Below, one piece after another: positions 5,147-52,071 of a stretch of DNA of 64,000 bases. The stretch is taken from positions 62,001 to 126,000 of the IMG/VR virus record IMGVR_UViG_3300028536_000014; one strand, 5' to 3'. Both the position numbers and the translations under genes were made by a program. The notes under the pieces were generated by a model, which was not told the DNA's origin, ran no database searches, and saw only the letters and a program-made list of their open reading frames with translations. Position 1 is the first letter of the stretch. Every line of letters begins with the position of its first letter.

Positions 5147-6358
5147 TTAGCGTTTGTTATTCGCTAAGAGCACGATACCTTTCGGTTCGTTCGCATTGTG
5201 ATAGGCTATCGCCGCTTCATCTCGGATGTTTATAGCAGCATTAACATCTCGATCATGGGTTTGATGACAGTGAGGACAGGTCCAAGTTCTTTCTGACAAC
5301 TTTAACTTACGATCAAGACGTTGTTGACAACTGCTACAAATATGACTTGAAGGGTAATAAGCATCCATAACGACTACAGAACAATGTCCAGATTCCTGGG
5401 CTTTATAGATCACGAAGGTCTTAAAGGTAGACCACGCTGCGTCTGAGATGTGTTTCGCTAATCGATAGTTTTTGACCATATTACTAGGCACAAGCGCTTC
5501 GAGTCCGATGACTTGGTTTTCGTCGACGAGGATTCGAGAGAGTTTGTGTAGATGGTCTTGACGTGCGTTAGCGATATGTTGGTGTATGGTAGAGACTTTA
5601 AGACAGGCTTTCTTGCGGTTATGGCTACCTTTGACTTTACGAGCTAAGGATTGTTGAGCCCGTTTAAGCTTTAAAGCGTATTTTTTAGTATGATGAGGGT
5701 TATCGATCTTGGTACCGTCTGAGAAAGTAAATAGAGACGTTAGACCTGCATCGATACCCGTAATTTTAGTACCTTTAGTAATATTAAATTCGTATTCACA
5801 AATAAAACAAACATAATACTTACCACTAGCTCTTTTAATTATAGTTAAAGAAGAAGGAGCTGATGGAAGTTCACGGTGCCATTCAATTTTAATAGGGTTA
5901 TCACATTTCGCTATGGTGAATTGACCATTTCTTATTTGAAAACCATCTCTCATTAAAGAGAATGTTTGTCGACCTTCTTTCTTTTTAAACCTAGGATACC
6001 CAATCCTCCGTCGGAAGAAATTAGAATAGGCTGTACCAAGATGTAACATCTCTTGCTGAAGGGCTGTAGCGATAGCTTCTTTTAACCATTCACAAATTGG
6101 GTCTGCTTTATAAATAGGAAGTCGTTTAACAAAATCATACCCGGTGGAGATAGGACGAGAAAGGTTAATAACCCCTTGTTCTTTTAAAGCTAGCCAGTTT
6201 TCATATTCTAGTTTAGCTTCTGATAATCCTCGATTAAAGACATATCGACAACATCCGAAGTTCTTAGCCAAGAATTCTTTCTGACTATCTGTAGGATATA
6301 TCCGAAAACAATAACCTTTTTTCATAATTGACGATATCCAATGTACTTCTACATACAA
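5147..6358 (-). mobile_element. tnpB: IS200/IS605-family RNA-guided endonuclease TnpB, no tnpA nearby
   Basis: N-terminal HTH (YCFRIYPT..Q...FGCCRYVFN), RuvC residues GIDAG, GLEAL and DRDVNAAINI, zinc finger CSSC...CPHC. Confidence 0.92.
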
Positions 6359-6532: not shown

Positions 6533-7135
6533 CTAAACATGTAGAATCGAATCCTCATTCTTTATAGACGTAATCGTATTAACACGTCTAAATTTTAGAC
6601 TGTAATGATTAAATCGACCATTAAGAATCATGTTGATTAAATCATAAATCCTATTATCATTACGATTAATAATATCGCCATTCTTATCAGTGATATCTTT
6701 TACATAAAAAGAATATCCATGAACTGTTGAATGACCATTATCAATACGAATACTACCACTCATCATCACGTGACAATTCAGTTTTAGATCTTCTTTGACA
6801 ATTTGGTTAAGTGTTCCAGATAGAGGTTCACCAACAGCTGTAAGCGTATTCTTATCGATAAGAATAGAACTGTAATTAGCATTCAAACTCAATCGCATAA
6901 ATTCAGATGAATTTTTCAATACGAATTTGAACTGTGGTAGATTCTCAGTTTGAAACCACAATATTTGATTATCGATTTTCATCGAGAACTGATAAAGTTG
7001 AATATCGGGATGAAGTCTATCAGTACGACTTACACTGCCGTCTTCAATAGCTTCATTTGTCAAAGTGATATCGAGAACATCTCGCATATCGTCAAACGGT
7101 AAAATGATCTTGTAGATTTTACTTTCGTCAGTCAT
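6533..7135 (-). CDS. Hypothetical protein
   Basis: 200-aa ORF. Confidence 0.55.
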   Translation of the reverse strand: MTDESKIYKIILPFDDMRDVLDITLTNEAIEDGSVSRTDRLHPDIQLYQFSMKIDNQILWFQTENLPQFKFVLKNSSEFMRLSLNANYSSILIDKNTLTAVGEPLSGTLNQIVKEDLKLNCHVMMSGSIRIDNGHSTVHGYSFYVKDITDKNGDIINRNDNRIYDLINMILNGRFNHYSLKFRRVNTITSIKNEDSILHV

Positions 7136-8669: not shown

Positions 8670-8923
8670 TTTATATATTTACAATAACCCACGAAACAGA
8701 ACATCATCAAGCAGTAGTTTGTATTGACGCCTTCTCAGAACAGATAACTAGAATACCGTTTCTGAAAAGGACTTTCATTCTACAACCAATATTTTGTTTA
8801 TCTAGTATAGCTCACGACCGAGTGGCGAATCGTGAACATTTCTTTGTCAGCCACCGTTCACAGATATTCGAAAAGCCACACCAAGGCTCTCTGCGTAACG
8901 AGTGTTCTTTCTAAAAACATAAC

Positions 8924-8999
8924 TGGTGGACCGTGATGGACTCGAACCATCGACCGACGGATTAAAAGTCCGCTACTCTACCAACTGAGTTAACGGTCC
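8924..8999 (-). tRNA. tRNA-Lys(UUU)
   Basis: Canonical cloverleaf, anticodon loop CTTTTAA, TTCGAGT T-loop, encoded CCA. Confidence 0.95.
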
Positions 9000-9057
9000 A
9001 TATACGACAAACATTTGTATAACCTTTGTATCCAAGAAAATCAAAACATTATGAGTA

Positions 9058-9131
9058 TGGGCGCGGTGAGATTCGAACTCACTATTTACCGATTATGAGT
9101 CGGGACCTTATACCTAATTAGGATCACGCCC
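9058..9131 (-). tRNA. tRNA-CAU (Ile2-like or elongator Met)
   Basis: Cloverleaf with CGA-CTCATAA-TCG arm resembling Ile2 tRNAs; CCA not encoded. Confidence 0.85.
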
Positions 9132-9234
9132 ATTGTCGAAACGATTCATGCTTTTCTCTTGAGTAATTATACAAACTTTATACTCAAGAAAACTCTATCA
9201 AGATATAATTAATGAGAGTTTTCTTGAATACTGA

Positions 9235-10030
9235 GCGACAGAAAATCTGATCTTCTCCTCCAAATTACGGCACGACCACTACTCACCTCGGCCGAAGTGA
9301 AGGTGTGGTTCATCCGATTGTTGAAAGAGAAGATCGGGTCGGTTCCTCCTCACTTATGATTTTGATCCCAATCAGCAATACATCTTCCGTTAGACGGACG
9401 ACATACTGATTTACTGACAGAGTATCTCACTAAGAATATTGGATTCTTCTAACAGGACTGTAAAGACAATCCATGGTTTTTTACAACGGTGATCGTTCGC
9501 CACAGCTGTTAACAAAGTTAAATTCGCTGCCGACCTTTGGCATTTTCTGGCAAAGCCAGAGCCCCTGTACCGGATGTTCATTTACCAAGTTACCAGGCTG
9601 AATCTGATCAGGGAACCATCAGCTGAATGGCTATTGATCAGACTATGAGAACTCATTAAACAAACTGTTGGCATACTAGTCTAATCCAACATAACGATAA
9701 TAGGGCTAAATACAAACGATTGCTCGGAGCATGTGGATCTCCACTGATGTTGTCGGGCATGACCACCGAATGCATTCGGCTAAGTCTTGGGATCGTGGAT
9801 TCGTACACTTACTGCTACCACTCAGTTGGCGCAAGTTTTAGTGCACTTACCACACCGTAAAGTACAACTCGAGGTACCGCTACAGGCATCGCCTGCAGAC
9901 CCGTAGGTCTGCAGGCGATCCGACGTCTACAAGACCGAACAAGAGATCTCGTAGTTTTTAACCCTAATCCCCACACATTGTAGAAAGTAATGCGCCGGGA
10001 AAAGGGAATATTAGATAGCCGAGTTATCGA
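9235..10030 (-). ncRNA. Candidate large structured ncRNA of unknown class (~0.8 kb)
   Basis: No ORF of 60 aa or more; 14-bp stem with cUACGg loop (9888-9919) and a cUUCGg loop (~9290) read on the minus strand; long hairpin at 9180-9232. Confidence 0.5.
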
Positions 10031-10040
10031 CTCTCCTTAA

Positions 10041-10538
10041 TTAATGTCTCACTATGCTAACAGATGCCGATTCACCAACAGGCTTGTCAATTCCGGTTGA
10101 TTTACTTCCAGATGTGTCTTTGAATGCGTTGACCGCTTGCATCAGCTGTTCATCAGACAATGAATCTTGTTCGATATTTAATGATTGGCCACTTGCAATA
10201 ATAGTAAGAAGTTCGTTTGAATTGTCGTCAATAATATCGAGACAAAATTTGAAGAAAGTGTTTCGAACAGTGGCTCTCAAACCTAGTGAGAAGTTTGCTT
10301 GATTTGTCCATATGCAGCCGATTGAAAAATCATCGGTGAGATGGTCGTCGTGATAATGTTGGAAGACCTTCTTGAAATCGAGTGCTTCCATACAGCAAAG
10401 AGGACCGCTGAAGGTACCACCACCAGCAGTGTTATGAGACCTGCCGATAAGTGCGGTCAGTTTGGCGTGATATTCCTCGAAAACCGCTACCTGAGTAGCA
10501 AAATCTTCAATGTTCATCACAGACTCCTTTTTAGTCAA
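10041..10538 (-). CDS. Hypothetical protein
   Basis: 165-aa ORF within the tRNA region. Confidence 0.55.
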   Translation of the reverse strand: MTKKESVMNIEDFATQVAVFEEYHAKLTALIGRSHNTAGGGTFSGPLCCMEALDFKKVFQHYHDDHLTDDFSIGCIWTNQANFSLGLRATVRNTFFKFCLDIIDDNSNELLTIIASGQSLNIEQDSLSDEQLMQAVNAFKDTSGSKSTGIDKPVGESASVSIVRH

Positions 10539-10576
10539 ATATCCTTAAAACAGAAAAGATACTGGACTAAAAAAAT

Positions 10577-10652
10577 TGATCCTTTCCCCCGCAACAATCA
10601 AGGCGCTGTGAGAACTCGTCTCGGGCCAGGTTGTATCTAAGAGGAAAGGATC
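10577..10652 (-). repeat. Hairpin element, copy 1, carrying the 21-mer CTGGCCCGAGACGAGTTCTCA
   Basis: Exact 21-nt match at 10609-10629 and 12598-12618; closed by GATCCTTTCC/GGAAAGGATC. Confidence 0.8.
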
Positions 10653-10895
10653 CTGTCTTTTTCATTGCTGCATTGATCCTTCACTTCTGATCTCTGCAAA
10701 CAGATGTGTGCACACACATCGTCATTTTCATTTGTTGTCAGCACGGTGCATAGGTGAGTTCACGTGCGCATATCATTTCTTCCTGTCATAAGCTACCTAC
10801 TTGTTATTTCCACAAGCCGGATTTTTCAGTAGCCCAAACGTGTTTAGTATCCCTAAAATATTAAACACAACCTTCCGCTATTGGCCCTACAAAAC

Positions 10896-11041
10896 TGGTC
10901 AGTCACGGTGTGATTCGAACACACAGCCAAATTGGTCCTTACGCCGAACACCCAATTTGGTACCAACTTTCCATTATCGATATCATGAGTCTCGATAACT
11001 TCTTTGCTAGTAACGTCTACCGTAATTCCGCCACGCGACTG
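10896..11041 (-). tRNA. Non-canonical 146-nt tRNA-Leu-like RNA with extended anticodon and variable arms
   Basis: Acceptor (C)AGTCGCG/CGTGACT(G), discriminator A, CCA; Leu-type D arm TGGCGGAATTACGGTAGACG; T arm GTGTG-TTCGAAT-CACAC. Confidence 0.7.
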
Positions 11042-11049
11042 TTTGAAAA

Positions 11050-11153
11050 TGGCGATCACTCTAGGATTCGAACCCAGCCCCTTTCCGATCGTGTTCAATA
11101 GGCTCTTTGTTTCCTATCGTTCCTATAGACCGAACTGCTTCATCCCAGTACTC
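11050..11153 (-). tRNA. Non-canonical tRNA-like RNA (104 nt), identity unclear
   Basis: T arm CTGGG-TTCGAAT-CCTAG, acceptor GAGTACT/AGTGATC (6 of 7 pairs), G-CCA end; no 7-nt anticodon loop. Confidence 0.55.
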
Positions 11154-11241
11154 GTCTTATACTCAATCAAAGATACTCTCTAGAATTCTCTCTGATCTTT
11201 CTTTGGTTTTCCTGTTCTCTTAGCTTAGTGACCATTGACTA

Positions 11242-11703
11242 TTATGCCGCTAAAGCGGCATCGATTGCATTGATGGCATATAACGTAAAATTAGTTATTT
11301 CTTTACCATCAGAACCCAATTGTGTTATTCCAGCCGTACGAAACTTAACCCTGTCTTTGAATGCATTGGGGTTTTGGTTGAATAGATTTTGTAAAACTAA
11401 CCCTTGTGGTGTTCTAAGAAGACGTATATCGGCAAATAAACTACCATCTTTAATGGTCAGTCTTTCTACGCGATGACTAACTTTGTCTTCAGGAACTTTA
11501 AGAGCGTCGTATGGATCTGGTAACGTTCTTAAATCAGGCATTCCAATTTGTCCAAATATCGGAAACTCACTATTCTTTAAAGTCCGAGACACAACGTCAG
11601 ATGAATAGATTCTGTCATTTTTATTGGGTTTATCCAACGTCATGACTTCGACATCATGTACGATAATGTCTCGTGTAATACAATCGCAATCTTCATCGTA
11701 CAT
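11242..11703 (-). CDS. T4 gp21-like prohead protease homologue with apparently substituted catalytic residues
   Basis: NKNDRIY...FGQIGMP...VSHRV..L..KDG.L.ADIRLL.TPQG..L...FRTAG, resembling NRNGR.Y/GELGHP/VSH/TP.G/SSRG. Confidence 0.55.
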   Translation of the reverse strand: MYDEDCDCITRDIIVHDVEVMTLDKPNKNDRIYSSDVVSRTLKNSEFPIFGQIGMPDLRTLPDPYDALKVPEDKVSHRVERLTIKDGSLFADIRLLRTPQGLVLQNLFNQNPNAFKDRVKFRTAGITQLGSDGKEITNFTLYAINAIDAALAA

Positions 11704-11739
11704 GATGTCTCCTTGAATTCATCACAAATTGTTTTGAAA

Positions 11740-11994
11740 CTAGTGTCCGTAATTACAACCGATCTTGGCTCTTTGACCATTCACTTCGATAATGGTATCG
11801 AAAATACCGCAACATCCTTCATCACGAGCTCTTTGATATTTATCCAAAGCAGCCTCGTCATTCAGATATGCGAATCGACGATTATCGATGCAGTGATCGT
11901 CCACATGTCTTTCCATCCACTCAAGAGCTTCTTCTTGAGTAGCAAAACTTCTTTCTTCTTCTCCGTCGGATGACGTGAAATCGACGATTGTCAT
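11740..11994 (-). CDS. Hypothetical acidic protein
   Basis: 84-aa ORF. Confidence 0.5.
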   Translation of the reverse strand: MTIVDFTSSDGEEERSFATQEEALEWMERHVDDHCIDNRRFAYLNDEAALDKYQRARDEGCCGIFDTIIEVNGQRAKIGCNYGH

Positions 11995-12216
11995 ATCGGA
12001 TTCCTTGGATGATGATAGTTAAGCTACTTCAAAAGCTTCGATATGCTTCGAAGAAATAGTCGCGATTAACGGAAAGAAATCAGGGTCCTTCCCTTCTTTG
12101 ATCCATTGTTTGTAAAACTTCTTTTTGAACCTATAGTTCTTCCATGGAACAGATAGATTGTAAAAGAACAAATTGACTTTCTTACGAAAGGTCATACATC
12201 ATCTTTTAATGTTAAG

Positions 12217-12290
12217 TGGTTGGAGGACTAGGACTCGAACCTAGATTAATGACGTCAAAGGACACCGTCCTACCATTAGACGATCCTCCA
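12217..12290 (-). tRNA. tRNA-Gln(UUG)
   Basis: U1-A72 acceptor TGGAGGA/TCCTCCA, anticodon loop CTTTGAC, CCA. Confidence 0.9.
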
Positions 12291-12566
12291 TCATAATCAC
12301 TTAATCATTAGAAAGAAAATAGGAACAGTTCCGGTTTCCAGGTAAAAACACAAACGTGTCATTTCATACTCCAATCAATAAACCCTTAGACGAGCACACG
12401 ATCACTACGCCTGGTATCACTGGTCCGAATGGGGTTGCAGGGGGGACCCATTCAGCTGAGGCGAAGTTTAACCAAATACCTTCATAATCCATAATTGTAA
12501 CAACGACATCATTAGAATTAGAAGGTTTTCATGAACGTGTGCTCCTCTAAAGATTCACATTAGAAG

Positions 12567-12643
12567 ACCCCTTTCATCATTAACGTCACTGGCACAATGA
12601 GAACTCGTCTCGGGCCAGCCGTCCTTATTTGACGAAAGGGGTC
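12567..12643 (-). repeat. Hairpin element, copy 2, carrying the 21-mer
   Basis: GACCCCTTTC/GAAAGGGGTC stem enclosing CTGGCCCGAGACGAGTTCTCA. Confidence 0.8.
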
Positions 12644-13268
12644 ATGCCACATGCAATATTGGTTTCAACTCCCTTTGAGCGCGATGCTCTCTGCAGAGTT
12701 CCACCATCGAAAGTGTACGAACACTCTCTCTTTCTGCTTTTTCAGCGTGCGGTTAATACACAAGTTAGGACTAGTTGGTTTTGAGTGCCGTAACACTCAC
12801 CTAGGTAGTCCTTGCTGGCTTATGCCAGTAGCCGCGTAACAAACAACACGGGTTTACAAATTATGACCCATATCGTTACGCGGCTATTCGGAGCCTAACG
12901 TCTTCATGTGAGGTATCTCCTCTTGTTGGCAGGTCAAAAGACTTCTCGTAAGAAGCCTGAACATGATGTCGGTGGCGAAAGGTAAGCGGTACCCTCGCAA
13001 CCTGTGACATCACACCTTTCTTACAACGTTTGCCCGAACGAGCTTATGGATTCTCCCCATCTGGCTCGGTGATCTTTCGATCTATTGCCGAAACAGTTCG
13101 GCATAACAACACGGCGGGCAGGTGCTCCTTAACGCCTTTCGGCATACCCTATCTCGAAAGATAGATCAGTCATTCAAGAACAAGAGCGGATCCTTGAATC
13201 AAGACGTAGTGATCGCCGATACCTCGGAGTATCGGTTTAGTTACCGTTAACGTCATACTACCATGCTA

Positions 13269-13360
13269 AGATCAGTGAAGGATGCTATTTCAAGGACGAC
13301 TCCACCGTAATTGGCATCACGGCTTCAAAGTCTCGCATCTATCCTACACATCAAAGATCC
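13269..13360 (-). rRNA. 23S rRNA L1-stalk (H76-H78)-like segment embedded in a phage ncRNA; not a complete rRNA
   Basis: TTGATGTGTAGGATAGATGCGAGACTTTGAAGCCGTGATGCCAATTACGGTGGAGTCGTCCTTGAAATAGCATC: 56 of 74 nt identical to the E. coli sequence as recalled, differences keep pairing. Confidence 0.85.
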
Positions 13361-14150
13361 GTTAAAGTTTCAACAGTACTAAACTAAACCGCGTGAAAGA
13401 AAACACGGGGCGTAACACCGCACCGAAAGAGGGTGAGTATGTTCGTATAGCCCCAGATCATGATCCGCATTCTGTTACCCCAGTCACGTAGGTTAGAGAA
13501 TAACACGAATCACGATTGTTTTCTTTTGTTTAGCGTTCCTGCTAACGATTGCATTGGGTTAGTCCCACGTCCACATTCTGGATGCTCATTTCCAGACTCA
13601 GTTTTCGATGGAGCTTTGGTAACATTCTTTTCGTTGACCTTACCATTTTGATAAGGCTAGAAGTAATAGCGACTTCAAAGAACATGTCTATTGATCAGTG
13701 TATCAAGCACAGACCGTTACGTTGGTCTGTGTTGAATCCCGCTCCAGTTTCCCGGCTACGGCTTCTCCCGTCGATGTTCACTTTTACGAAAAGAATTCAT
13801 TGCTTGGTATAAAGCTTGATGGTAATGGCTTCGCCAGTGTTTATACCACCTGCGCATGGACGATCTCTCCTCCACGACTCACCATTGTTACGAGGCATGC
13901 ATTTGCCCAACACCATTCTGCATTTACCAACCAATACATATATCTGACTTTTTTGATCAGATTAAACGATAATACAAGCACTCCATTAAGCACTCGCGTA
14001 GTGCTCAACAGGCTGCTTCCTCAGACGTAAATAGATCACAAGGTCTACATATCTGAATAGACAACTTGACTAGTCGTGGCCACAACCAATCCGTAGGGTT
14101 TGAATAGTTTCGAATGCCTTCGCTACTACCCCTTCGCAAATCACCCTTAG

Positions 14151-14211
14151 CTGTTATACTTATTTTAATGTTAAAATAAGTTTCGTCCCTTAAAGGACTC
14201 GTCAGTAACAG
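14151..14211 (-). ncRNA. Hammerhead ribozyme (type I)
   Basis: CTGTTA-CTGACGA-GTCC(TTTAAG)GGAC-GAA-ACTTATTTTAA(CA)TTAAAATAAGT-A-TAACAG; predicted cut after GUA, between 14157 and 14156. Confidence 0.9.
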
Positions 14212-14225
14212 TTTTATTCTACAAA

Positions 14226-14301
14226 TGGTGCCCCTGTCTGGTACCGAGCCAGATTCCCTGGCTTACAAAGCCAGACCTCATCCATTAAAGGCTTCAGGGG
14301 C
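14226..14301 (-). tRNA. tRNA-Thr(UGU), atypical T loop
   Basis: GCCCCTG/CAGGGGC acceptor, anticodon loop TTTGTAA, T loop CTCGGTA, CCA. Confidence 0.85.
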
Positions 14302-14308
14302 ATGTTTG

Positions 14309-14782
14309 TCAATTGACGATATTATTTCTCGTCTTGTATTCCTGAATAGCGGCGTTGATTTGATCGTCTGTCAGAAGAAGAACATCGACAATTGAAAAAT
14401 ACATGACGAGCGTTTCATCACCTGTGATTTCTCGTATTTCTTCAACGAAAATGCTATACTTGGCTGGTTCACCAGGAAACAAACCGACAATGATTTCGAG
14501 GCTCACGTTAGAATCATCACGAATCGTACCATCATCATTGGCTGGATACCAATCCAAGCGATACTCGGAGTCCTCATGACATCCAAGATCTTCTTTACCA
14601 TCGATGATCAGATCGAACTCATGTTCACCGAGTTCGACAGAACCAAGACCGTTCGGTTCAGAACTCAAAGCTTCGGTTATCTTGGCAACATATTGAGCGA
14701 AGCGAGCTTTCTCTCGAATGTTTTTCCGAGAATCTTTCTCTACTTCTTCTTCGTACTCTTCATCAAGTTCAGTCATGTTCAA
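14309..14782 (-). CDS. Hypothetical acidic protein
   Basis: 157-aa ORF. Confidence 0.55.
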   Translation of the reverse strand: MNMTELDEEYEEEVEKDSRKNIREKARFAQYVAKITEALSSEPNGLGSVELGEHEFDLIIDGKEDLGCHEDSEYRLDWYPANDDGTIRDDSNVSLEIIVGLFPGEPAKYSIFVEEIREITGDETLVMYFSIVDVLLLTDDQINAAIQEYKTRNNIVN

Positions 14783-14810
14783 CTCCTCTGTTGCGTGCTA
14801 TACCTCTGAG

Positions 14811-15008
14811 TTACTTCGGTTGTTTTGGTTTCAGTTCTTTGACAGAGCCAACAAGAGGTGCGCCGTATCGGCTCCGTAGCAACATCCCACCTAAACGCAA
14901 TCGCTGACCTGGAGTGGCGTTTTTGAATCTGTCAGATGCCATCAGAGTCTCCAAATTCTTCTTGAAGGTTGTGATTCCGCTGAAGGACATATCGTTTCCT
15001 TTTAACAC
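14811..15008 (-). CDS. Hypothetical basic small protein
   Basis: 65-aa ORF. Confidence 0.45.
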   Translation of the reverse strand: MLKGNDMSFSGITTFKKNLETLMASDRFKNATPGQRLRLGGMLLRSRYGAPLVGSVKELKPKQPK

Positions 15009-15012
15009 AAAA

Positions 15013-15062
15013 TGGTCCCCGGAGCCGGAATCGAACCGGCACGCCTTACAGCGAGGGATTTT
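15013..15062 (-). pseudogene. 3-prime half (exon 2) of a tRNA-Leu(UAA)-type gene; 5-prime half decayed
   Basis: AAAATCCCTC-variable arm-GCCGGTTCGATTCCGGC-TCCGGGG-A-CCA; upstream exon keeps only AGGGAACTT, with no matching acceptor strand or D arm. Confidence 0.75.
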
Positions 15063-15706
15063 CTTACCACTATAGCTTTCGCTACCATTAAGAAGTATTC
15101 AGCCTTCACTCTTATAGAGTTATTAACTCAGAGCTATTCCTTACTAACTTCTACATGTTTGTGGTCTGGACTGTACCTTAACCTTAGTTCCAACAGAACT
15201 TTTGATGACTCAGCTACACGGTTTCCCGGCTTTTTATCGAAGTTACTTCGCTAGTCAAAGAAATGCTAATTACTAGAATTAGATCATCGCAATGAAAACT
15301 TTAGGTTGTTGCCTACCAGTCTCTACACGTTTTCTTCTCAAGAACAGTCTGTGGAGATCTAATGTTCTATCCCGGTATCATTACTCCCCAACCATTTCTG
15401 GTCACCGGCTCACATCTACCATACGGTAGCTATTGAAGAATTTCGCTCGGTATTAGCATATGAACTGCAACAGACAACTCACTTAGCTTTCACCGACTTT
15501 GACAACATTCACCCTAGCCCTTACCCCGTTGATATTATCTCTGGACGATGATATCTCTATCACCTATTTATAATGGATGCTAGTTTATACGTCTTTCGAT
15601 TGAGTTGTTTCATGAGGGTAGTGAGAGCTTCAACTCACATAAGCTTTTATTCTTCCAACTCTGTTTTACCAACTCATTTTTCGTAGGTGCTCAAATTAAA
15701 GTACTT
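15063..15706 (-). ncRNA. Group I intron, ORF-less (644 nt), in the tRNA-Leu anticodon
   Basis: P1 CTT|AAG with TTTGAG (U.G at the splice site); core motifs AAAGTCGGTGAAAGCT, GCTAATACCGAG, GTAGAGACTG, AAGGTACAGTCC; terminal G. Confidence 0.88.
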
Positions 15707-15738
15707 AAGTTCCCTTTTCTACAAACTACCAACAACAT

Positions 15739-15824
15739 TGGTGCCCAGGGGGGGACTCGAACCCCCAAAAACCACGGGTTTTAAGCCCGCAAAATGTGCC
15801 ATTCTTTATTAGGTTCACCCAGGC
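15739..15824 (-). tRNA. tRNA with UAA anticodon (Leu), enlarged D region and no long variable arm
   Basis: GCCTGGG/CCTGGGC acceptor, GCGGG-CTTAAAA-CCCGT, GGGGG-TTCGAGT-CCCCC, A-CCA. Confidence 0.75.
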
Positions 15825-15833
15825 TAATACAAA

Positions 15834-16697
15834 TCAGAGATAACTGTATTCTAAATCAGCTATCTTTGCAAAACCTTTTCTTCTTACTTGGTGATTAACA
15901 GCATCGTAACTATGACCGGTTTCTTTGATAGCTTCAGTTAAAGAATTATATATCGTTACTAACTTCCTCACGATATCTTTAACACAAACTATTTTGCGAT
16001 ACCCACCAGTTCTATGACCGTTAACAATATTTCCTTCACCAAGCTGTGTCATTTTCTTAAGATCAAGAATTGGCCACGGATTTCCATCAGCATATTTAAA
16101 CGCGTGATAATCAACGTGATAACCAAAGTTAAGACCTTTTCTTAAACATTTAGAAACTGTTGCTGGATGAACTTCAAATCTTTCGGAGAATTCTCTCAAC
16201 GAATACATAAGAAATTCTCTTGGTTCTAAACCAAGATATTTAACTGCGATAGGTTTGTTATCGCTCATAAATCCAGACAATCGTGCATGTTCTACATTCT
16301 CTTTTCCAGTACACCATTCAAGGTTATCTGGAAGATTATGTAGTTGATTTCCATCACAATGATTAACTTCTAAATTACTAAAAGATTTATCTAGATGTCT
16401 AGATGGTCGACCAATGAAAGTTTTTGCTATCAATCGACTAAATTTATGACATACAGGTTTTTTGCCAGGGCTTGTTATAATTACACCTACCGTACCATTA
16501 CCAGAAAGTTGTGGTTTTAACAAGTTACCTGTATGTATGTTTACTATTTTTCCATCTCGACTAACACCAAGTCTTTTGTCATCAGGAAAGTAAAAGAAGT
16601 TATCGAAACCGAGTACCGGTTCAGGATGAACTTCTTCCAAATCAGAAGGATCATTCATCCTTACTACGGCACTCATATCAAGACTCCTGTTGTTCAA
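15834..16697 (-). CDS. Free-standing HNH homing endonuclease (NUMOD4/HNH type)
   Basis: VSRDGKI...LKPQ...RLIAKTFI...VNHCDGNQLHNLPDNLEWCT.KEN..HA. Confidence 0.88.
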   Translation of the reverse strand: MNNRSLDMSAVVRMNDPSDLEEVHPEPVLGFDNFFYFPDDKRLGVSRDGKIVNIHTGNLLKPQLSGNGTVGVIITSPGKKPVCHKFSRLIAKTFIGRPSRHLDKSFSNLEVNHCDGNQLHNLPDNLEWCTGKENVEHARLSGFMSDNKPIAVKYLGLEPREFLMYSLREFSERFEVHPATVSKCLRKGLNFGYHVDYHAFKYADGNPWPILDLKKMTQLGEGNIVNGHRTGGYRKIVCVKDIVRKLVTIYNSLTEAIKETGHSYDAVNHQVRRKGFAKIADLEYSYL

Positions 16698-16750
16698 AAT
16701 GTGTATTCCAGTTCCACCACGCTTCCACAGTCGTGTGACACATTATTGCA

Positions 16751-50492: not shown

Positions 50493-50832
50493 CCTTACCT
50501 TCAAGTAGAATCGTTACTTCTACTCCGTGTTGATACACAGCTCTAACTTTCATTAGAAGAGGAGAACATATCACGATCTCTTTCGAGACCCCTTCCATTT
50601 CAGCTCACTTGAGCCTACTCCGCGCTACCGGATGTTCGTTGAACGTTTTTCTGACGGATCAGAAACTTCGCTGCGGATTATCCAATCTTCTTATTTGTTA
50701 CCATACCTGAGTGATTAGTTCAGCCATTGTTATATCACTATAACAACTTGGTATAAGAAGCTCTAAAGGACTTTCCCGACAATTAGAAAGGTGCTATTCA
50801 GATATCACTATCTGAAAGGACTAAAACTGTTA
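50493..50832 (-). ncRNA. Group I intron, ORF-less (340 nt), in the RNAP catalytic motif
   Basis: P1 GAT|TAA with TTAGTC; AATTGTCGGGAAA, AATCCGCAGC, GTTCAACGAACAT/ATGTTC (P7); terminal G. Confidence 0.92.
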
Positions 50833-52071
50833 ATCAGCGTTCATGCTCGTTGTGATCAAAATACTGACTCCAAATGTCAGATCCTTCGGATCGTTTTTAA
50901 CTCTTGGAATATAAACCTTCTGAATGGAACCTTGAAGCAAAGATGGAAATCGATTAAACAAGACTGGATAACGCCCATCTTTAGTATCAGAGATAATTTC
51001 TTTCAGATATTGATCAAGCAGTGGATGATAAATTTCAGTATGAGATAGAAGAAGTCCCACAGCGTCATTAATCAACATTCCACTTTTCTTGATAAGCTTG
51101 TTAATGAGCATCGGTCTGAAAATCGTTAAACCAACACCCCAAGGTATTTCAATTTCATCATATCGATGTGCGTCTGTTATCGAAGAGATAACAGCTCGTG
51201 CGGAATAATCGAATCGAGATCCACCGATATAATGTCGAAAGAGTCCAGACTTCTTAGCAACGATCGTCTTGAAATAACTGTCATAAAACTTACAGCTAAG
51301 AAGATACATCGCTCTAGCTGTACGATTTTCTTTAACAGAAACTGTTTGATTATGAAAATCTTTATCGATCGATACCAACATTTCGATAGCTTCAAGTGCT
51401 AACGGAACGGTACTGTCGATATAAGTGGCCAGAGATGTTTTCTCGATAACCAAGAGAGACTTATTCAGTAAAGGAATATAATCCGAGAACAAAATATCTT
51501 TCTTAACTGTTAAAAGATCAGCAAGATAATCTCGTCCTATTCCTTTGATTTTAAAATCTTTCAGACTCATCAAGAATTCGATGATCGATTGAAAATTCTG
51601 AACGAAGTAATTATATCCACGTTGAATACCAGCTTGTTCAATTTTATCTACGACATCAGGACGATTGATCTGAGGTGAATATGTTGTATCAGTTAACCAT
51701 CTCAAGATGCTAAATTTTGATTTGCTAAATCGATAATCCAACATAATCCAGATTATTGGTGACATCAATTTCTCAACACCAATAGGTTTTCGAAACCAAA
51801 CCAACGGTTCAATGGTGTTTTCAATCGCTGCACTGACGAGTGTGTCGCAGTGTTCACAAATCGTATTCTTACTGAATTCTCCTTTTGTCATTCCACATCG
51901 ACACGAAGGAAGAATTGTCACCATGTCACTTGAATAAGTTGTGGTGATTAATTGTTCAATACGTTCACGATCTTTCGTGGTAGTGTTAAGCAAGTCGTTT
52001 ATGATAATCGGAGGGTTCTTGAGCCCCTCGAACATCATATTGTTATCGATCAAACTCTGGATAATAGGCAC
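50833..52071 (-). CDS. Exon 1 of the non-virion RNA polymerase beta-prime-like subunit (phiKZ gp55-like); spliced product 473 aa
   Basis: Zinc finger CRCG...CEHC, K.GLFR..I.GSR.DYSARAVIS, FNRFPSL, ends SMNAD. Confidence 0.9.

What the first reader, a model, noticed from the sequence alone, without database searches (positions are those of the whole stretch)
10896..11041. 146-nt tRNA-Leu-like RNA with a telescoped anticodon arm
Acceptor (7 bp, possibly 8 with C-G), Leu-type D arm, T arm and A-CCA are canonical. The anticodon stem (ACTAGC/GTTGGT) continues through a purine-rich internal loop into a second hairpin (TTATCGA/TCGATAA) capped by GA-CTCATGA-TA, and the variable arm is a 9-bp stem with a large loop. 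LeuRS largely ignores the anticodon, so it could be charged yet not decode. Inference: an aminoacylated decoy, a bulge-type intron-containing tRNA, or a tRNA-scaffolded aptamer.
Basis: partly seen in the sequence, partly recalled or inferred. Interest (0 to 1): 0.65.

Follow-up and report, generated by a model that had tools for sequence, protein, structure and literature searches.

The report
Anticodon-less tRNA-Leu-shaped phage RNA
A jumbo phage encodes a 146-nt RNA that keeps the leucine-tRNA shape but has a long custom hairpin where the anticodon should be, and it belongs to a large, apparently undescribed class of such tRNA look-alikes in uncultured phages.

Summary
On the minus strand (11041→10896) lies a tRNA-Leu-type frame: a 7- or 8-bp acceptor stem, a Leu-type D arm, a T arm and an encoded ACCA. 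Its anticodon arm is replaced by a roughly 50-nt rod, and its variable arm is a 9-bp hairpin. The window is part of a chimallin-encoding (nucleus-forming) jumbo phage, and the RNA sits in that phage's tRNA island. ARAGORN and the Rfam tRNA model miss it, and no splicing scheme restores an anticodon loop.

Pattern scans of viral contigs found more than 140 elements with the same plan. They keep the tRNA-Leu acceptor, D and T frame, including U8, U48 and A73. Between the D and T arms they carry a hypervariable, structured insert of 17 to about 150 nt, and they have no anticodon arm (1 of 138, the chance level). Some contigs hold up to about 9 copies.

A covariance model built from these elements, without the window, ranks the candidate first in the 64 kb (46.7 bits). 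Where two contigs share an insert, it is 81–100% identical while the flanks are only 58–73% identical.

Best reading: a non-decoding RNA on a natural tRNA scaffold. It is probably matured like a tRNA and may be chargeable by LeuRS, and the insert is the functional module. The function is unknown. The closest precedent is phage T4 RNA C, whose role is also unknown.

The parts
10896..11041 (-). Whole 146-nt tRNA-Leu-framed, anticodon-less RNA gene
   Evidence: Sequence. MFE cloverleaf z = -2.2. Family covariance model R1 hit at 11040-10900, 46.7 bits, E = 6e-10. Strand-specific fold.
11034..11041 (-). 5' acceptor strand AGUCGCG, preceded by C(-1), which can pair with G10900 as an 8th pair
   Evidence: The first four pairs (A1-U72, G2-C71, U3-A70, C4-G69) are the same as in the abundant AGUCAGG clade.
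11013..11033 (-). U8, G9 and the Leu-type D arm (GCG / GAAUUACGGUAGA / CGU), with G18G19 and a 2-nt AC insertion
   Evidence: The 5' frame is 23/28 identical to the family consensus, against 14-18/27 for genuine tRNA-Leu genes.
10962..11011 (-). Extended arm replacing the anticodon arm: 6-bp outer stem, purine-rich 7x6 internal loop, 7-bp inner helix, G.A and A-U, then the 7-nt loop CUCAUGA
   Evidence: There is no canonical 5-bp stem with a 7-nt loop at the tRNA position.
10927..10960 (-). Variable-arm hairpin: 9 perfect bp with a 16-nt loop
10908..10926 (-). C47 and U48, then the T arm GUGUG-UUCGAAU-CACAC
   Evidence: U48 and the T-loop residues are the positions conserved across the class.
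10896..10907 (-). 3' acceptor strand CGUGACU, then G10900 (discriminator by the family alignment, or 8th pair), then A-CCA
   Evidence: Four of the 5 canonical tRNAs in the window end in A-CCA.

Best explanation
This is a real gene for a non-decoding small RNA built on a tRNA-Leu scaffold. It lies in the tRNA island of a nucleus-forming (chimallin) jumbo phage.

Shown:
- The acceptor, D and T frame, with the nucleotides that build the tRNA L-shape, is intact.
- The anticodon arm is replaced by a long rod and the variable arm is enlarged, so no anticodon sits at decoding distance.
- The same design recurs in more than 140 elements from uncultured phage contigs. The frame is conserved there, while the insert is hypervariable between lineages and conserved within them.

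Inferred mechanism:
- The RNA is transcribed with the neighbouring tRNA-like piece and tRNAs.
- The frame lets host RNase P and the 3'-end/CCA machinery cut it out and stabilise it as an L-shaped RNA, just as in the engineered 'tRNA scaffold'.
- The frame also carries the full LeuRS identity set, so the RNA may be leucylated and bound by EF-Tu.
- The insert is the lineage-specific working part, binding a host or phage protein or RNA. In this phage the insert is a rod of roughly 21 stacked layers, ending in an anticodon-loop-like CUCAUGA, plus a 9-bp hairpin.

The target of the insert is unknown.
For: 1. Anatomy and strand specificity.
2. Genome context. Chimallin, split RNAP and a PhiKZ-type capsid protein. 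Five canonical tRNAs on the same strand. The candidate starts 8 nt after a preceding ...GCCA end.
3. Class discovery. A D-loop...T-loop pattern with an 80-110-nt gap gave 116 viral loci. Forty-six distinct sequences have perfect 7-bp acceptor closure and a T stem, where about 0.2% would be expected by chance.
4. The Rfam tRNA model matches several members end to end at 32-40 bits while skipping the whole anticodon arm.
5. Only 1 of 138 members has a canonical anticodon arm, against 1.4 expected from shuffles.
6. U8 is present in 137/138, G9 in 138/138, U48 in 129/138 and A73 in 116/138. These match the published LeuRS identity elements, and the varied parts are the ones dispensable for charging (PMC9976931).
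7. Inserts fall into 118 unrelated clusters among 138 elements. They are more structured than shuffles (mean z = -0.82, p about 1e-15). Where shared, they are 81-100% identical while the flanking 200 nt are 58-73% identical. One insert occurs in two different frames.
8. Up to about 9 copies with different inserts lie in one tRNA array.
9. Model R1, built without the window, ranks the candidate first in the window.
Against: - There is no expression, processing or charging data for this RNA or any class member.
- No diverged homologue of this particular insert exists in the collections searched. Only the identical phage was found, so its extra stems have no covariation support of their own.
- The R1 score of the candidate (46.7 bits) is only slightly above that of canonical phage tRNA-Leu genes (41-42 bits) and below bona fide members (55-92 bits). 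Its T stem and 3' frame are no closer to the class than ordinary tRNA-Leu. It may therefore be an independent derivation rather than a true relative.
- No shared motif, no enriched antisense target and no recurrent partner protein point to what the inserts bind.
- Members were selected for closed stems, so the pairing statistics are partly circular.
Confidence: 0.5

Rival explanations
1. Frame-only decoy or sink. The working part is the tRNA-Leu frame itself. The RNA is leucylated, or simply bound, and titrates LeuRS, EF-Tu, RNase P, or a host toxin or defence nuclease that recognises class II tRNA bodies. The insert only keeps it off the ribosome.
For: The class conserves exactly the LeuRS identity set, including A73 in 84% (PMC9976931). 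Minimal tRNA-Leu lacking the anticodon and variable arms is still charged. No common motif or target was found for the inserts.
Against: Inserts are conserved far above their flanks and are structured. A phage can carry about 9 copies with different inserts, which a generic decoy does not need. CCA is encoded in only 4 of 138 members. The window's D loop has a 2-nt insertion before G18G19, and the acceptor stem may be 8 bp, both of which could impair LeuRS recognition.
Confidence: 0.22
2. RNA-processing punctuation. The tRNA-like frame serves only as an RNase P/RNase Z cleavage signal that cuts long phage transcripts, and the excised RNA has no function of its own.
For: It sits between ORFs on the same strand, with no recognisable sigma-70 promoter or terminator of its own. 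The frame is what the processing enzymes need.
Against: This does not explain the Leu-specific identity elements, the conserved inserts, or the ORF-free arrays of many copies.
Confidence: 0.1
3. Decaying tRNA-Leu pseudogene. A former phage tRNA-Leu whose anticodon and variable regions have drifted and expanded, with no current function.
For: Standard tRNA finders miss it. No homologue of the insert is known. This phage is a database singleton.
Against: All four helices of the frame and the L-shape nucleotides are intact. The insert forms long perfect helices (7 bp and 9 bp; core z = -3.2) rather than random sequence. The same design is maintained in more than 140 elements, with insert conservation.
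Confidence: 0.1
4. Intron-containing tRNA. The extra hairpin is an intron (bulge-helix-bulge, group I or other) that is removed to give a decoding tRNA.
For: The outer stem CUAGC/GUUGG resembles a tRNA-Leu anticodon stem. Group I introns do occur elsewhere in this window.
Against: There is no 3-4-3 bulge-helix-bulge geometry. The 38 nt between the stem strands contain no U33-NNN-R37 loop context at the stem, so excision leaves no anticodon loop. The insert is too short for a group I intron and gives no Rfam intron hit. ARAGORN in intron mode gives no call here at normal stringency and gives arbitrary anticodons across the class.
Confidence: 0.03
5. tmRNA-like or peptide-coding RNA. The 15-codon ORF starting at the AUG in the distal loop is translated or used as a tag template.
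For: An AUG...UAA frame of 15 codons spans the insert (read from the sequence).
Against: ARAGORN finds no tmRNA. There is no alanine-type G3:U70, a full D arm is present, the ORF is buried in helices, and class inserts can be as short as 17 nt.
Confidence: 0.02

Closest known systems
Phage T4 'species 1' RNA (rnaC) and 'species 2' RNA (rnaD)
   Same: Both are stable small RNAs of 139 and 119 nt, encoded in tandem at the end of a phage tRNA cluster. rnaC has a canonical T arm (CCGGG-UUCGAAU-CCCGG), a 10-bp hairpin directly before it in the variable-arm position, an arm of about 60 nt, and pairing ends. Their function is still unknown (PMC3014915, PMC9697503).
   Different: There is no detectable sequence homology: R1 gives rnaC only 19.4 bits and Rfam gives no tRNA hit. 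rnaC lacks the Leu-type D arm. The acceptor closure of rnaC is weak in my fold.
Engineered 'tRNA scaffold' for recombinant RNA (anticodon arm replaced by the RNA of interest)
   Same: The design principle is identical: keep the acceptor, D and T arms so that the cell processes and protects the RNA, and put the cargo where the anticodon stem-loop was (PMC3753655; further details from my own knowledge of Ponchon and Dardel's method).
   Different: That is a laboratory construct. Here the design is natural, Leu-type, and also enlarges or replaces the variable arm.
Minimalist E. coli tRNA-Leu lacking the anticodon and variable arms
   Same: It shows that a tRNA-Leu frame alone is a LeuRS substrate provided A73 and the D/T-loop contacts are intact (PMC9976931, citing Larkin 2002).
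   Different: Those are in vitro constructs. Charging of the phage RNA has not been tested. According to the same review, editing needs the anticodon arm.
Allo-tRNA-like 'irregular tRNA' polycistrons and tRNA-Sec-like tRNAs (8/4, 9/3, 8/5)
   Same: They have unusual acceptor lengths and long variable arms, occur in clusters and in some phages, and were proposed to be possible regulatory ncRNAs (PMC5389517, PMC7609411).
   Different: Those keep an anticodon arm and mostly have Ser identity. The candidate has a Leu-type 3-bp D stem, not the 6-bp/4-nt D arm of tRNA-Sec, and gives no Rfam tRNA-Sec hit.
Other tRNA mimics: tmRNA, bacterial Y RNA (YrlA), B. cereus tRNA-Other, gammaherpesvirus tRNA-miRNA hybrids (TMERs)
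   Same: All are tRNA-shaped modules reused for non-decoding roles. TMERs (from my own knowledge) couple a viral tRNA-like unit to effector hairpins processed by tRNA enzymes.
   Different: tmRNA is Ala-type, lacks a true D arm and is much larger, and none is detected here. YrlA has its ends in the anticodon-equivalent stem, so it is permuted (10.1101/312249). TMER hairpins lie 3' of the tRNA unit rather than inside it.

Membership tests
Canonical decoding tRNA-Leu | 7-bp acceptor stem, discriminator A73, CCA end | tested here: inconclusive
   The 7 bp are present. The 3' tail reads G-ACCA, so it is either G73 without an in-register CCA or an 8-bp stem with A73-CCA.
Canonical decoding tRNA-Leu | 5-bp anticodon stem with a 7-nt loop (U33, Leu anticodon, R37) directly after position 26 | tested here: not met
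   A 6-bp stem is followed by 38 nt of internal loop, helix and cap, so there is no loop at the canonical distance. ARAGORN and Rfam tRNA give no call.
Canonical decoding tRNA-Leu | Leu-type D arm (3-bp stem, GG in a long loop), T arm with UUCGAAU, U8, U48 | tested here: met
   with a 2-nt AC insertion in the D loop.
Phage tRNA-Leu-framed, anticodon-less RNAs (class defined here) | Closed acceptor stem, U8 G9, GCG...CGY D stem with GGAAU..GGUAGA loop, U48, UUCGAAU T arm | tested here: met
   R1 covariance model 46.7 bits, E = 6e-10, top hit in the window. 5' frame 23/28 identical to the consensus.
Phage tRNA-Leu-framed, anticodon-less RNAs (class defined here) | No canonical anticodon arm. A structured insert lies between the D arm and the T arm. 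| tested here: met
   Insert of about 88 nt, z = -3.2. In the class, 1 of 138 has an anticodon arm.
Phage tRNA-Leu-framed, anticodon-less RNAs (class defined here) | Common descent with the abundant AGUCAGG clade (shared acceptor and T-arm sequence) | tested here: inconclusive
   It shares A1-U72, G2-C71, U3-A70 and C4-G69 and the D arm. The T stem differs, the 3' frame is no closer than in true tRNA-Leu, and the R1 score lies between canonical tRNA-Leu (41-42 bits) and members (55-92 bits).
Intron-containing tRNA (bulge-helix-bulge or group I) | A recognisable splice motif, and an exon junction that restores a 7-nt anticodon loop | tested here: not met
   No 3-4-3 BHB geometry, no Rfam intron hit, and no restorable loop.
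tmRNA | Ala-type acceptor (G3:U70), reduced D region, tag ORF with pseudoknots, detection by ARAGORN | tested here: not met
   One search finds no tmRNA. Positions 3:70 are U-A, and a full D arm is present.
tRNA-Sec / allo-tRNA | 8/5, 8/4 or 9/3 acceptor-T branch, 6-bp D stem with a 4-nt loop, an anticodon arm with an anticodon | tested here: not met
   An 8/5 branch is possible, but the D arm is 3 bp with a 13-nt loop, there is no anticodon loop, and there is no Rfam tRNA-Sec hit.
T4 rnaC-type stable RNA | Stable, RNase P-processed RNA of about 140 nt from a phage tRNA cluster | not testable with these tools
   The architecture is similar and the position in a tRNA cluster is similar. Stability and processing need experiments. 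No sequence homology was found.

The most novel reading that the evidence does not exclude
Phages widely use natural 'cargo tRNAs'. These are tRNA-Leu frames that are matured, and possibly leucylated, like tRNAs, but carry interchangeable, selectively maintained RNA modules in place of the anticodon and variable arms. Several different modules can occur per genome. They would act as trans-acting effectors (sponges, aptamers or guides) against host or rival-phage factors. The window's RNA would be a jumbo-phage representative, and T4 RNA C a distant functional cousin, which would give a handle on a 50-year-old unknown.
Probability: 0.35. Interest if true: 0.85.

Novelty: new variant of a known kind. 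Interest (0 to 1): 0.7.

Why it matters
If the reading is right, phages have evolved the same trick that RNA engineers use. They embed a functional RNA in a tRNA body so that the host's own tRNA enzymes cut it out, protect it and perhaps charge it.

It is absent from Rfam except as weak tRNA hits, and I found no description of it in the searchable literature. It would therefore add a new kind of phage-encoded regulatory or counter-defence RNA.

It would also explain 'odd tRNA' calls with nonsensical anticodons in phage annotations. And it would offer testable hypotheses for the long-unexplained T4 RNAs C and D.

For this particular phage, it adds to an unusually rich RNA island that also holds a hammerhead, group I introns and an L1-stalk-like rRNA mimic.

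Tried and rejected
- Organellar origin. Suggested at first by scattered tRNAs, an rRNA fragment and a group I intron, and rejected because the proteins are those of a chimallin jumbo phage.
- Nucleotide search of the region and of the element in cultured phages: no match. A class member searched there hit only tRNA-Gln T arms.
- Close relatives sought through neighbouring ORFs, capsid pieces, exact and degenerate DNA patterns, and the large protein collection. Only the same phage came back: IMG/VR UViG 3300028536_000014, and Ga0137416_10000001, which is 100% identical. The closest cultured relative has 33% chimallin identity. No covariation test of the candidate's own extra stems was therefore possible.
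- 'Present in all bacterial phyla'. The genome scan returned 122 hits, but about 110 are chance 16-mers inside coding sequence, so this idea was rejected.
- Intron readings, tmRNA and tRNA-Sec: rejected (see the membership table).
- The relaxed ARAGORN call 'tRNA-Pro(ggg) 10900-10990' uses the variable hairpin as an anticodon arm and appears only below the default threshold, so it was rejected.
- Recurrent partner protein near class members: none, only ordinary phage genes (TerL in 18 of 141 loci, SSB, exonuclease, HNH).
- Inserts antisense to their own locus: no enrichment.
- Shared k-mer or motif among inserts: none after correction.
- A closing stem at the anticodon-stem position as a universal class feature: not enriched (44% against 40%).
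- Similarity of the candidate's insert to any other insert: none.
- The upstream '184-nt second element'. Its 7-bp closure has a chance probability of about 0.3 and there is no D arm, so only the 3' half (T arm + acceptor strand + CCA) is solid.

Full report
WHAT THE WINDOW IS

The 64-kb window has 37.6% G+C. Its genes are tightly packed and almost all lie on the minus strand. Its large proteins match the PhiKZ-type nuclear shell protein chimallin, a split multisubunit RNA polymerase beta' subunit, the PhiKZ major capsid protein, tail proteins and a TnpB transposase. It is therefore part of a nucleus-forming jumbo phage.

The source contig is IMG/VR UViG 3300028536_000014, 244.7 kb. An identical copy is metagenome contig Ga0137416_10000001. 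The nearest cultured phage, Burkholderia phage FLC9, shares only 33% chimallin identity.

Positions of roughly 8900-16000 form an RNA island. On the minus strand it holds tRNA-Lys, Met, Gln, Thr and Leu(UAA), a group I intron-like element, a hammerhead-like core and a 23S-rRNA-like piece.

THE OBSERVATION

- Acceptor stem AGUCGCG/CGUGACU, 7 bp with one G.U. C11041:G10900 can add an eighth pair.
- U8 and G9.
- A 3-bp D stem with the loop GAAUUACGGUAGA. This is the tRNA-Leu type with two extra bases.
- A 6-bp stem at the anticodon-stem position (ACUAGC/GUUGGU, two G.U pairs). It continues through a purine-rich 7x6 internal loop into a perfect 7-bp helix, capped by G.A, A-U and the loop CUCAUGA.
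- A 9-bp perfect hairpin with a 16-nt loop in the variable-arm position.
- C47 and U48, then the T arm GUGUG-UUCGAAU-CACAC.
- ACCA at the 3' end.

Unconstrained folding reproduces this cloverleaf: -44.3 kcal/mol, z = -2.2. The insert alone gives z = -3.2. The opposite strand folds markedly worse and loses the G.U-containing stem. Default ARAGORN and the Rfam tRNA model do not call the element. Four of the five canonical tRNAs in the window end in A-CCA, so I favour an 8-bp acceptor stem followed by A73-CCA.

IT CANNOT DECODE AND IT IS NOT AN INTRON-CONTAINING tRNA

There is no 7-nt loop at the canonical distance from the elbow. The 38 nt between the two strands of the outer stem contain no U33-anticodon-R37 context next to that stem, so no excision would restore an anticodon loop. 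The geometry is not bulge-helix-bulge. The insert is far too short for a group I intron, and Rfam finds no intron, ribozyme, riboswitch or tmRNA there even at E = 10. Relaxed ARAGORN calls are noise.

A LARGER CLASS

No diverged relative of this phage could be found. I therefore searched viral contigs for the Leu-type D-loop motif and the T-loop motif separated by 80-110 nt, a spacing no normal tRNA has.

I estimate that about 0.2% would do so by chance. Nearly half share the acceptor AGUCAGG/CCUGACU, whose first four pairs are those of the window's RNA.

A second scan with that 5' frame returned 122 viral hits, of which 98 are closed elements 70 to more than 190 nt long. The same pattern in bacterial genomes gave mostly chance 16-mers in coding sequence and only about 10 real elements. 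The class is therefore essentially viral. No cultured phage in the annotated collection carries the frame.

The Rfam tRNA model matches several members end to end at 32-40 bits, above its threshold, while skipping all 17 positions of the anticodon arm and absorbing 62-80 nt there.

PROPERTIES OF THE CLASS (138 PARSED UNIQUE ELEMENTS)

- The frame is tRNA-Leu: U8 in 137, G9 in 138, the D arm UGGCGGAAU(U)GGUAGACGC, U48 in 129, the T loop UUCGAAU in 95, and discriminator A in 116 or G in 17.
- These conserved residues, together with G18G19 and the T-loop residues, are the ones that build the L-shape. They are also the documented identity set for bacterial LeuRS. The anticodon and variable arms are dispensable for charging, and minimal tRNA-Leu lacking both is still aminoacylated (PMC9976931).
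- Only 1 of 138 elements has a canonical anticodon arm, against 1.4 expected from shuffles.
- The inserts range from 17 to about 150 nt and fall into 118 unrelated clusters, 104 of them singletons.
- The inserts share no k-mer, are not antisense to their own loci and have no recurrent neighbouring protein.
- The inserts are nonetheless not junk. They fold better than dinucleotide shuffles (mean z = -0.82, p about 1e-15). In every subfamily that shares an insert, the insert is 81-100% identical while the 200 nt on each side are only 58-73% identical.
- One subfamily shows a compensatory C-G to U-A change in the stem at the anticodon-stem position. One insert occurs in two different acceptor frames.
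- Some contigs carry arrays. L130 has at least 9 elements with different inserts, mixed with canonical tRNAs, in about 3.5 kb without ORFs. L012 and the window have two tRNA-like pieces in tandem.

Caveat: both scans fixed part of the frame, and I filtered for closed stems. Frame conservation and the 99.8% pairing are therefore partly by construction. The unbiased signals are the high fraction of hits that close, plus U8, G9, U48, A73 and C74, the lack of anticodon arms, and insert conservation relative to flanks.

DOES THE WINDOW'S RNA BELONG?

A covariance model of 32 members, built without the window, ranks the candidate first in the 64 kb. It scores 46.7 bits, E = 6e-10, full length. The phage's own tRNA-Leu scores 23.7 bits and its tRNA-Gln 21.1 bits. 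The 5' frame is 23/28 identical to the class consensus, against 14-18/27 for genuine tRNA-Leu genes.

However, canonical tRNA-Leu genes of other phages score 41-42 bits and bona fide members 55-92 bits. The candidate's T stem and 3' frame are no closer to the class than ordinary tRNA-Leu. I conclude that it shares the design and a Leu-type frame with the class. Common descent with the AGUCAGG clade remains unproven.

It also differs in several ways: an encoded CCA (only 4 of 138 in the class), a probable 8th acceptor pair, a 2-nt D-loop insertion, and an insert with no similarity to any other.

HOW IT MOST LIKELY WORKS

Shown: an intact tRNA-Leu frame, no decoding geometry, a stable strand-specific insert, residence in a tRNA cluster, and a recurrent design with conserved inserts.

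Inferred:
- The frame is recognised by RNase P and the 3'-end/CCA machinery, so the RNA is excised and stabilised like a tRNA. The 5' end lies 8 nt after a preceding ...GCCA.
- Because the LeuRS identity set is kept, it may be leucylated and bound by EF-Tu.
- The insert is the lineage-specific effector that binds a protein or RNA.

This is the logic of the engineered tRNA scaffold (PMC3753655).

Rivals:
- A frame-only chargeable decoy explains the identity elements but not the insert conservation or the multiple different copies.
- A pure processing signal explains neither the Leu identity nor the arrays.
- A decaying pseudogene is contradicted by the perfect helices and the recurrent design.
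- The intron and tmRNA readings are largely refuted.

COMPARISON WITH WHAT IS KNOWN

The closest precedent is phage T4's species 1 RNA (rnaC, 139 nt). It sits with rnaD in tandem at the end of the T4 tRNA cluster. It has a canonical T arm, a 10-bp hairpin in the variable-arm position and an arm of about 60 nt. It is expressed and stable, and its role is still unknown (PMC3014915, PMC9697503). There is no detectable sequence homology.

Other comparators:
- Allo-tRNA-like irregular tRNA polycistrons (PMC5389517, PMC7609411).
- B. cereus tRNA-Other (PMC3399842).
- YrlA (10.1101/312249).
- tmRNA.
- Gammaherpesvirus tRNA-miRNA hybrids (from my own knowledge).

A survey of structured RNAs in IMG/VR mentions unspecified tRNA-like candidates but not this class (PMC10690425). 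Seven literature searches found no description. That library is incomplete, so prior description cannot be excluded.

VERDICT

The feature is real and is not a decoding tRNA. It is best described as a new variant of the 'phage tRNA-cluster stable RNA' kind: a tRNA-Leu-scaffolded, anticodon-less RNA that exemplifies a large class apparently not yet characterised. Its function is unknown. The scaffold-plus-cargo mechanism is my best-supported inference (confidence about 0.5). Interest: 0.7.

Noticed in passing
window 13270-13359 (-): A stand-alone 90-nt piece matches bacterial 23S rRNA (Rfam LSU model positions 2126-2215, 63.6 bits, E = 2e-16). From memory of the E. coli sequence, it reads like the L1 stalk (helices 76-78), which is the uL1 binding site and the E-site tRNA-elbow binder. 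It lies in a 2-kb ORF-poor stretch of the phage RNA island, 2.2 kb from the candidate. It could be a possible uL1 or tRNA-elbow mimic.
   Followed up: partly
window 14152-14226 (-): A hammerhead ribozyme core (CUGACGAG...CGAAAC) lies immediately 3' of tRNA-Thr (14226-14301). RAGATH-1 hammerhead 34.8 bits (below the gathering score of 56.3) and type I hammerhead 23.4 bits. It may release the tRNA 3' end.
   Followed up: partly
window 11050-11077 (-), possibly up to 11233: A perfect tRNA 3' half (T arm CUGGG-UUCGAAU-CCUAG, AGUGAUC, G, CCA) ends 8 nt before the candidate. A complementary GGUCACU at 11233 would make a 184-nt element overlapping the stop codon of ORF 11242-11703. That closure has a chance probability of about 0.3 and there is no D arm.
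   Followed up: partly
window 15151-15571 (-) and 50541-50852 (-): Two group I intron matches. One (43 bits, below threshold) lies just downstream of tRNA-Leu(UAA). The other (59.5 bits) lies between ORFs that match pieces of the RNA polymerase beta' subunit.
   Followed up: no
window 15742-15824 (-) and 16642-16727 (-): The phage's tRNA-Leu(UAA) has a poor D arm and scores only 32.6 bits with Rfam. A weak tRNA-Leu-like 5' part (R1 16.7 bits, E = 0.03) lies about 0.9 kb upstream, across an HNH-endonuclease ORF (15834-16697). A split or rearranged tRNA-Leu gene is possible.
   Followed up: no
window ~16593-16606 (minus-strand transcript): The insert segment AAAGAAGUUAUCGA of the candidate is perfectly complementary to 14 nt near the 5' end of the HNH ORF. 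About 0.02-0.05 such matches are expected by chance in the window.
   Followed up: partly
window 5147-6358 (-): A TnpB (IS605 OrfB-type) gene lies among separate ORFs of which at least one (6533-7135) matches part of the PhiKZ major capsid protein. This suggests that the capsid gene region is interrupted by mobile elements.
   Followed up: no
class members in viral loci (e.g. L006-L229): The three bases after the discriminator are CAA (55), CUA (21) or CAC (16), and CCA in only 4 of 138. C74 is present in 127/138 and U(-1) in 113/138. This near-CCA but non-CCA trailer is unexplained.
   Followed up: partly
L130:280-3480 (-), also L162, L140, L146, L179, L264: Arrays of up to about 9 anticodon-less tRNA-Leu-framed elements with different inserts are interleaved with canonical tRNAs in ORF-free DNA. 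ARAGORN labels some of them as tRNAs with arbitrary or 4-base anticodons.
   Followed up: partly
L077:576-626 (+): A DUF2693-FD RNA motif (Rfam RF02926, 59.9 bits) sits about 80 nt upstream of a class member (705-850).
   Followed up: no
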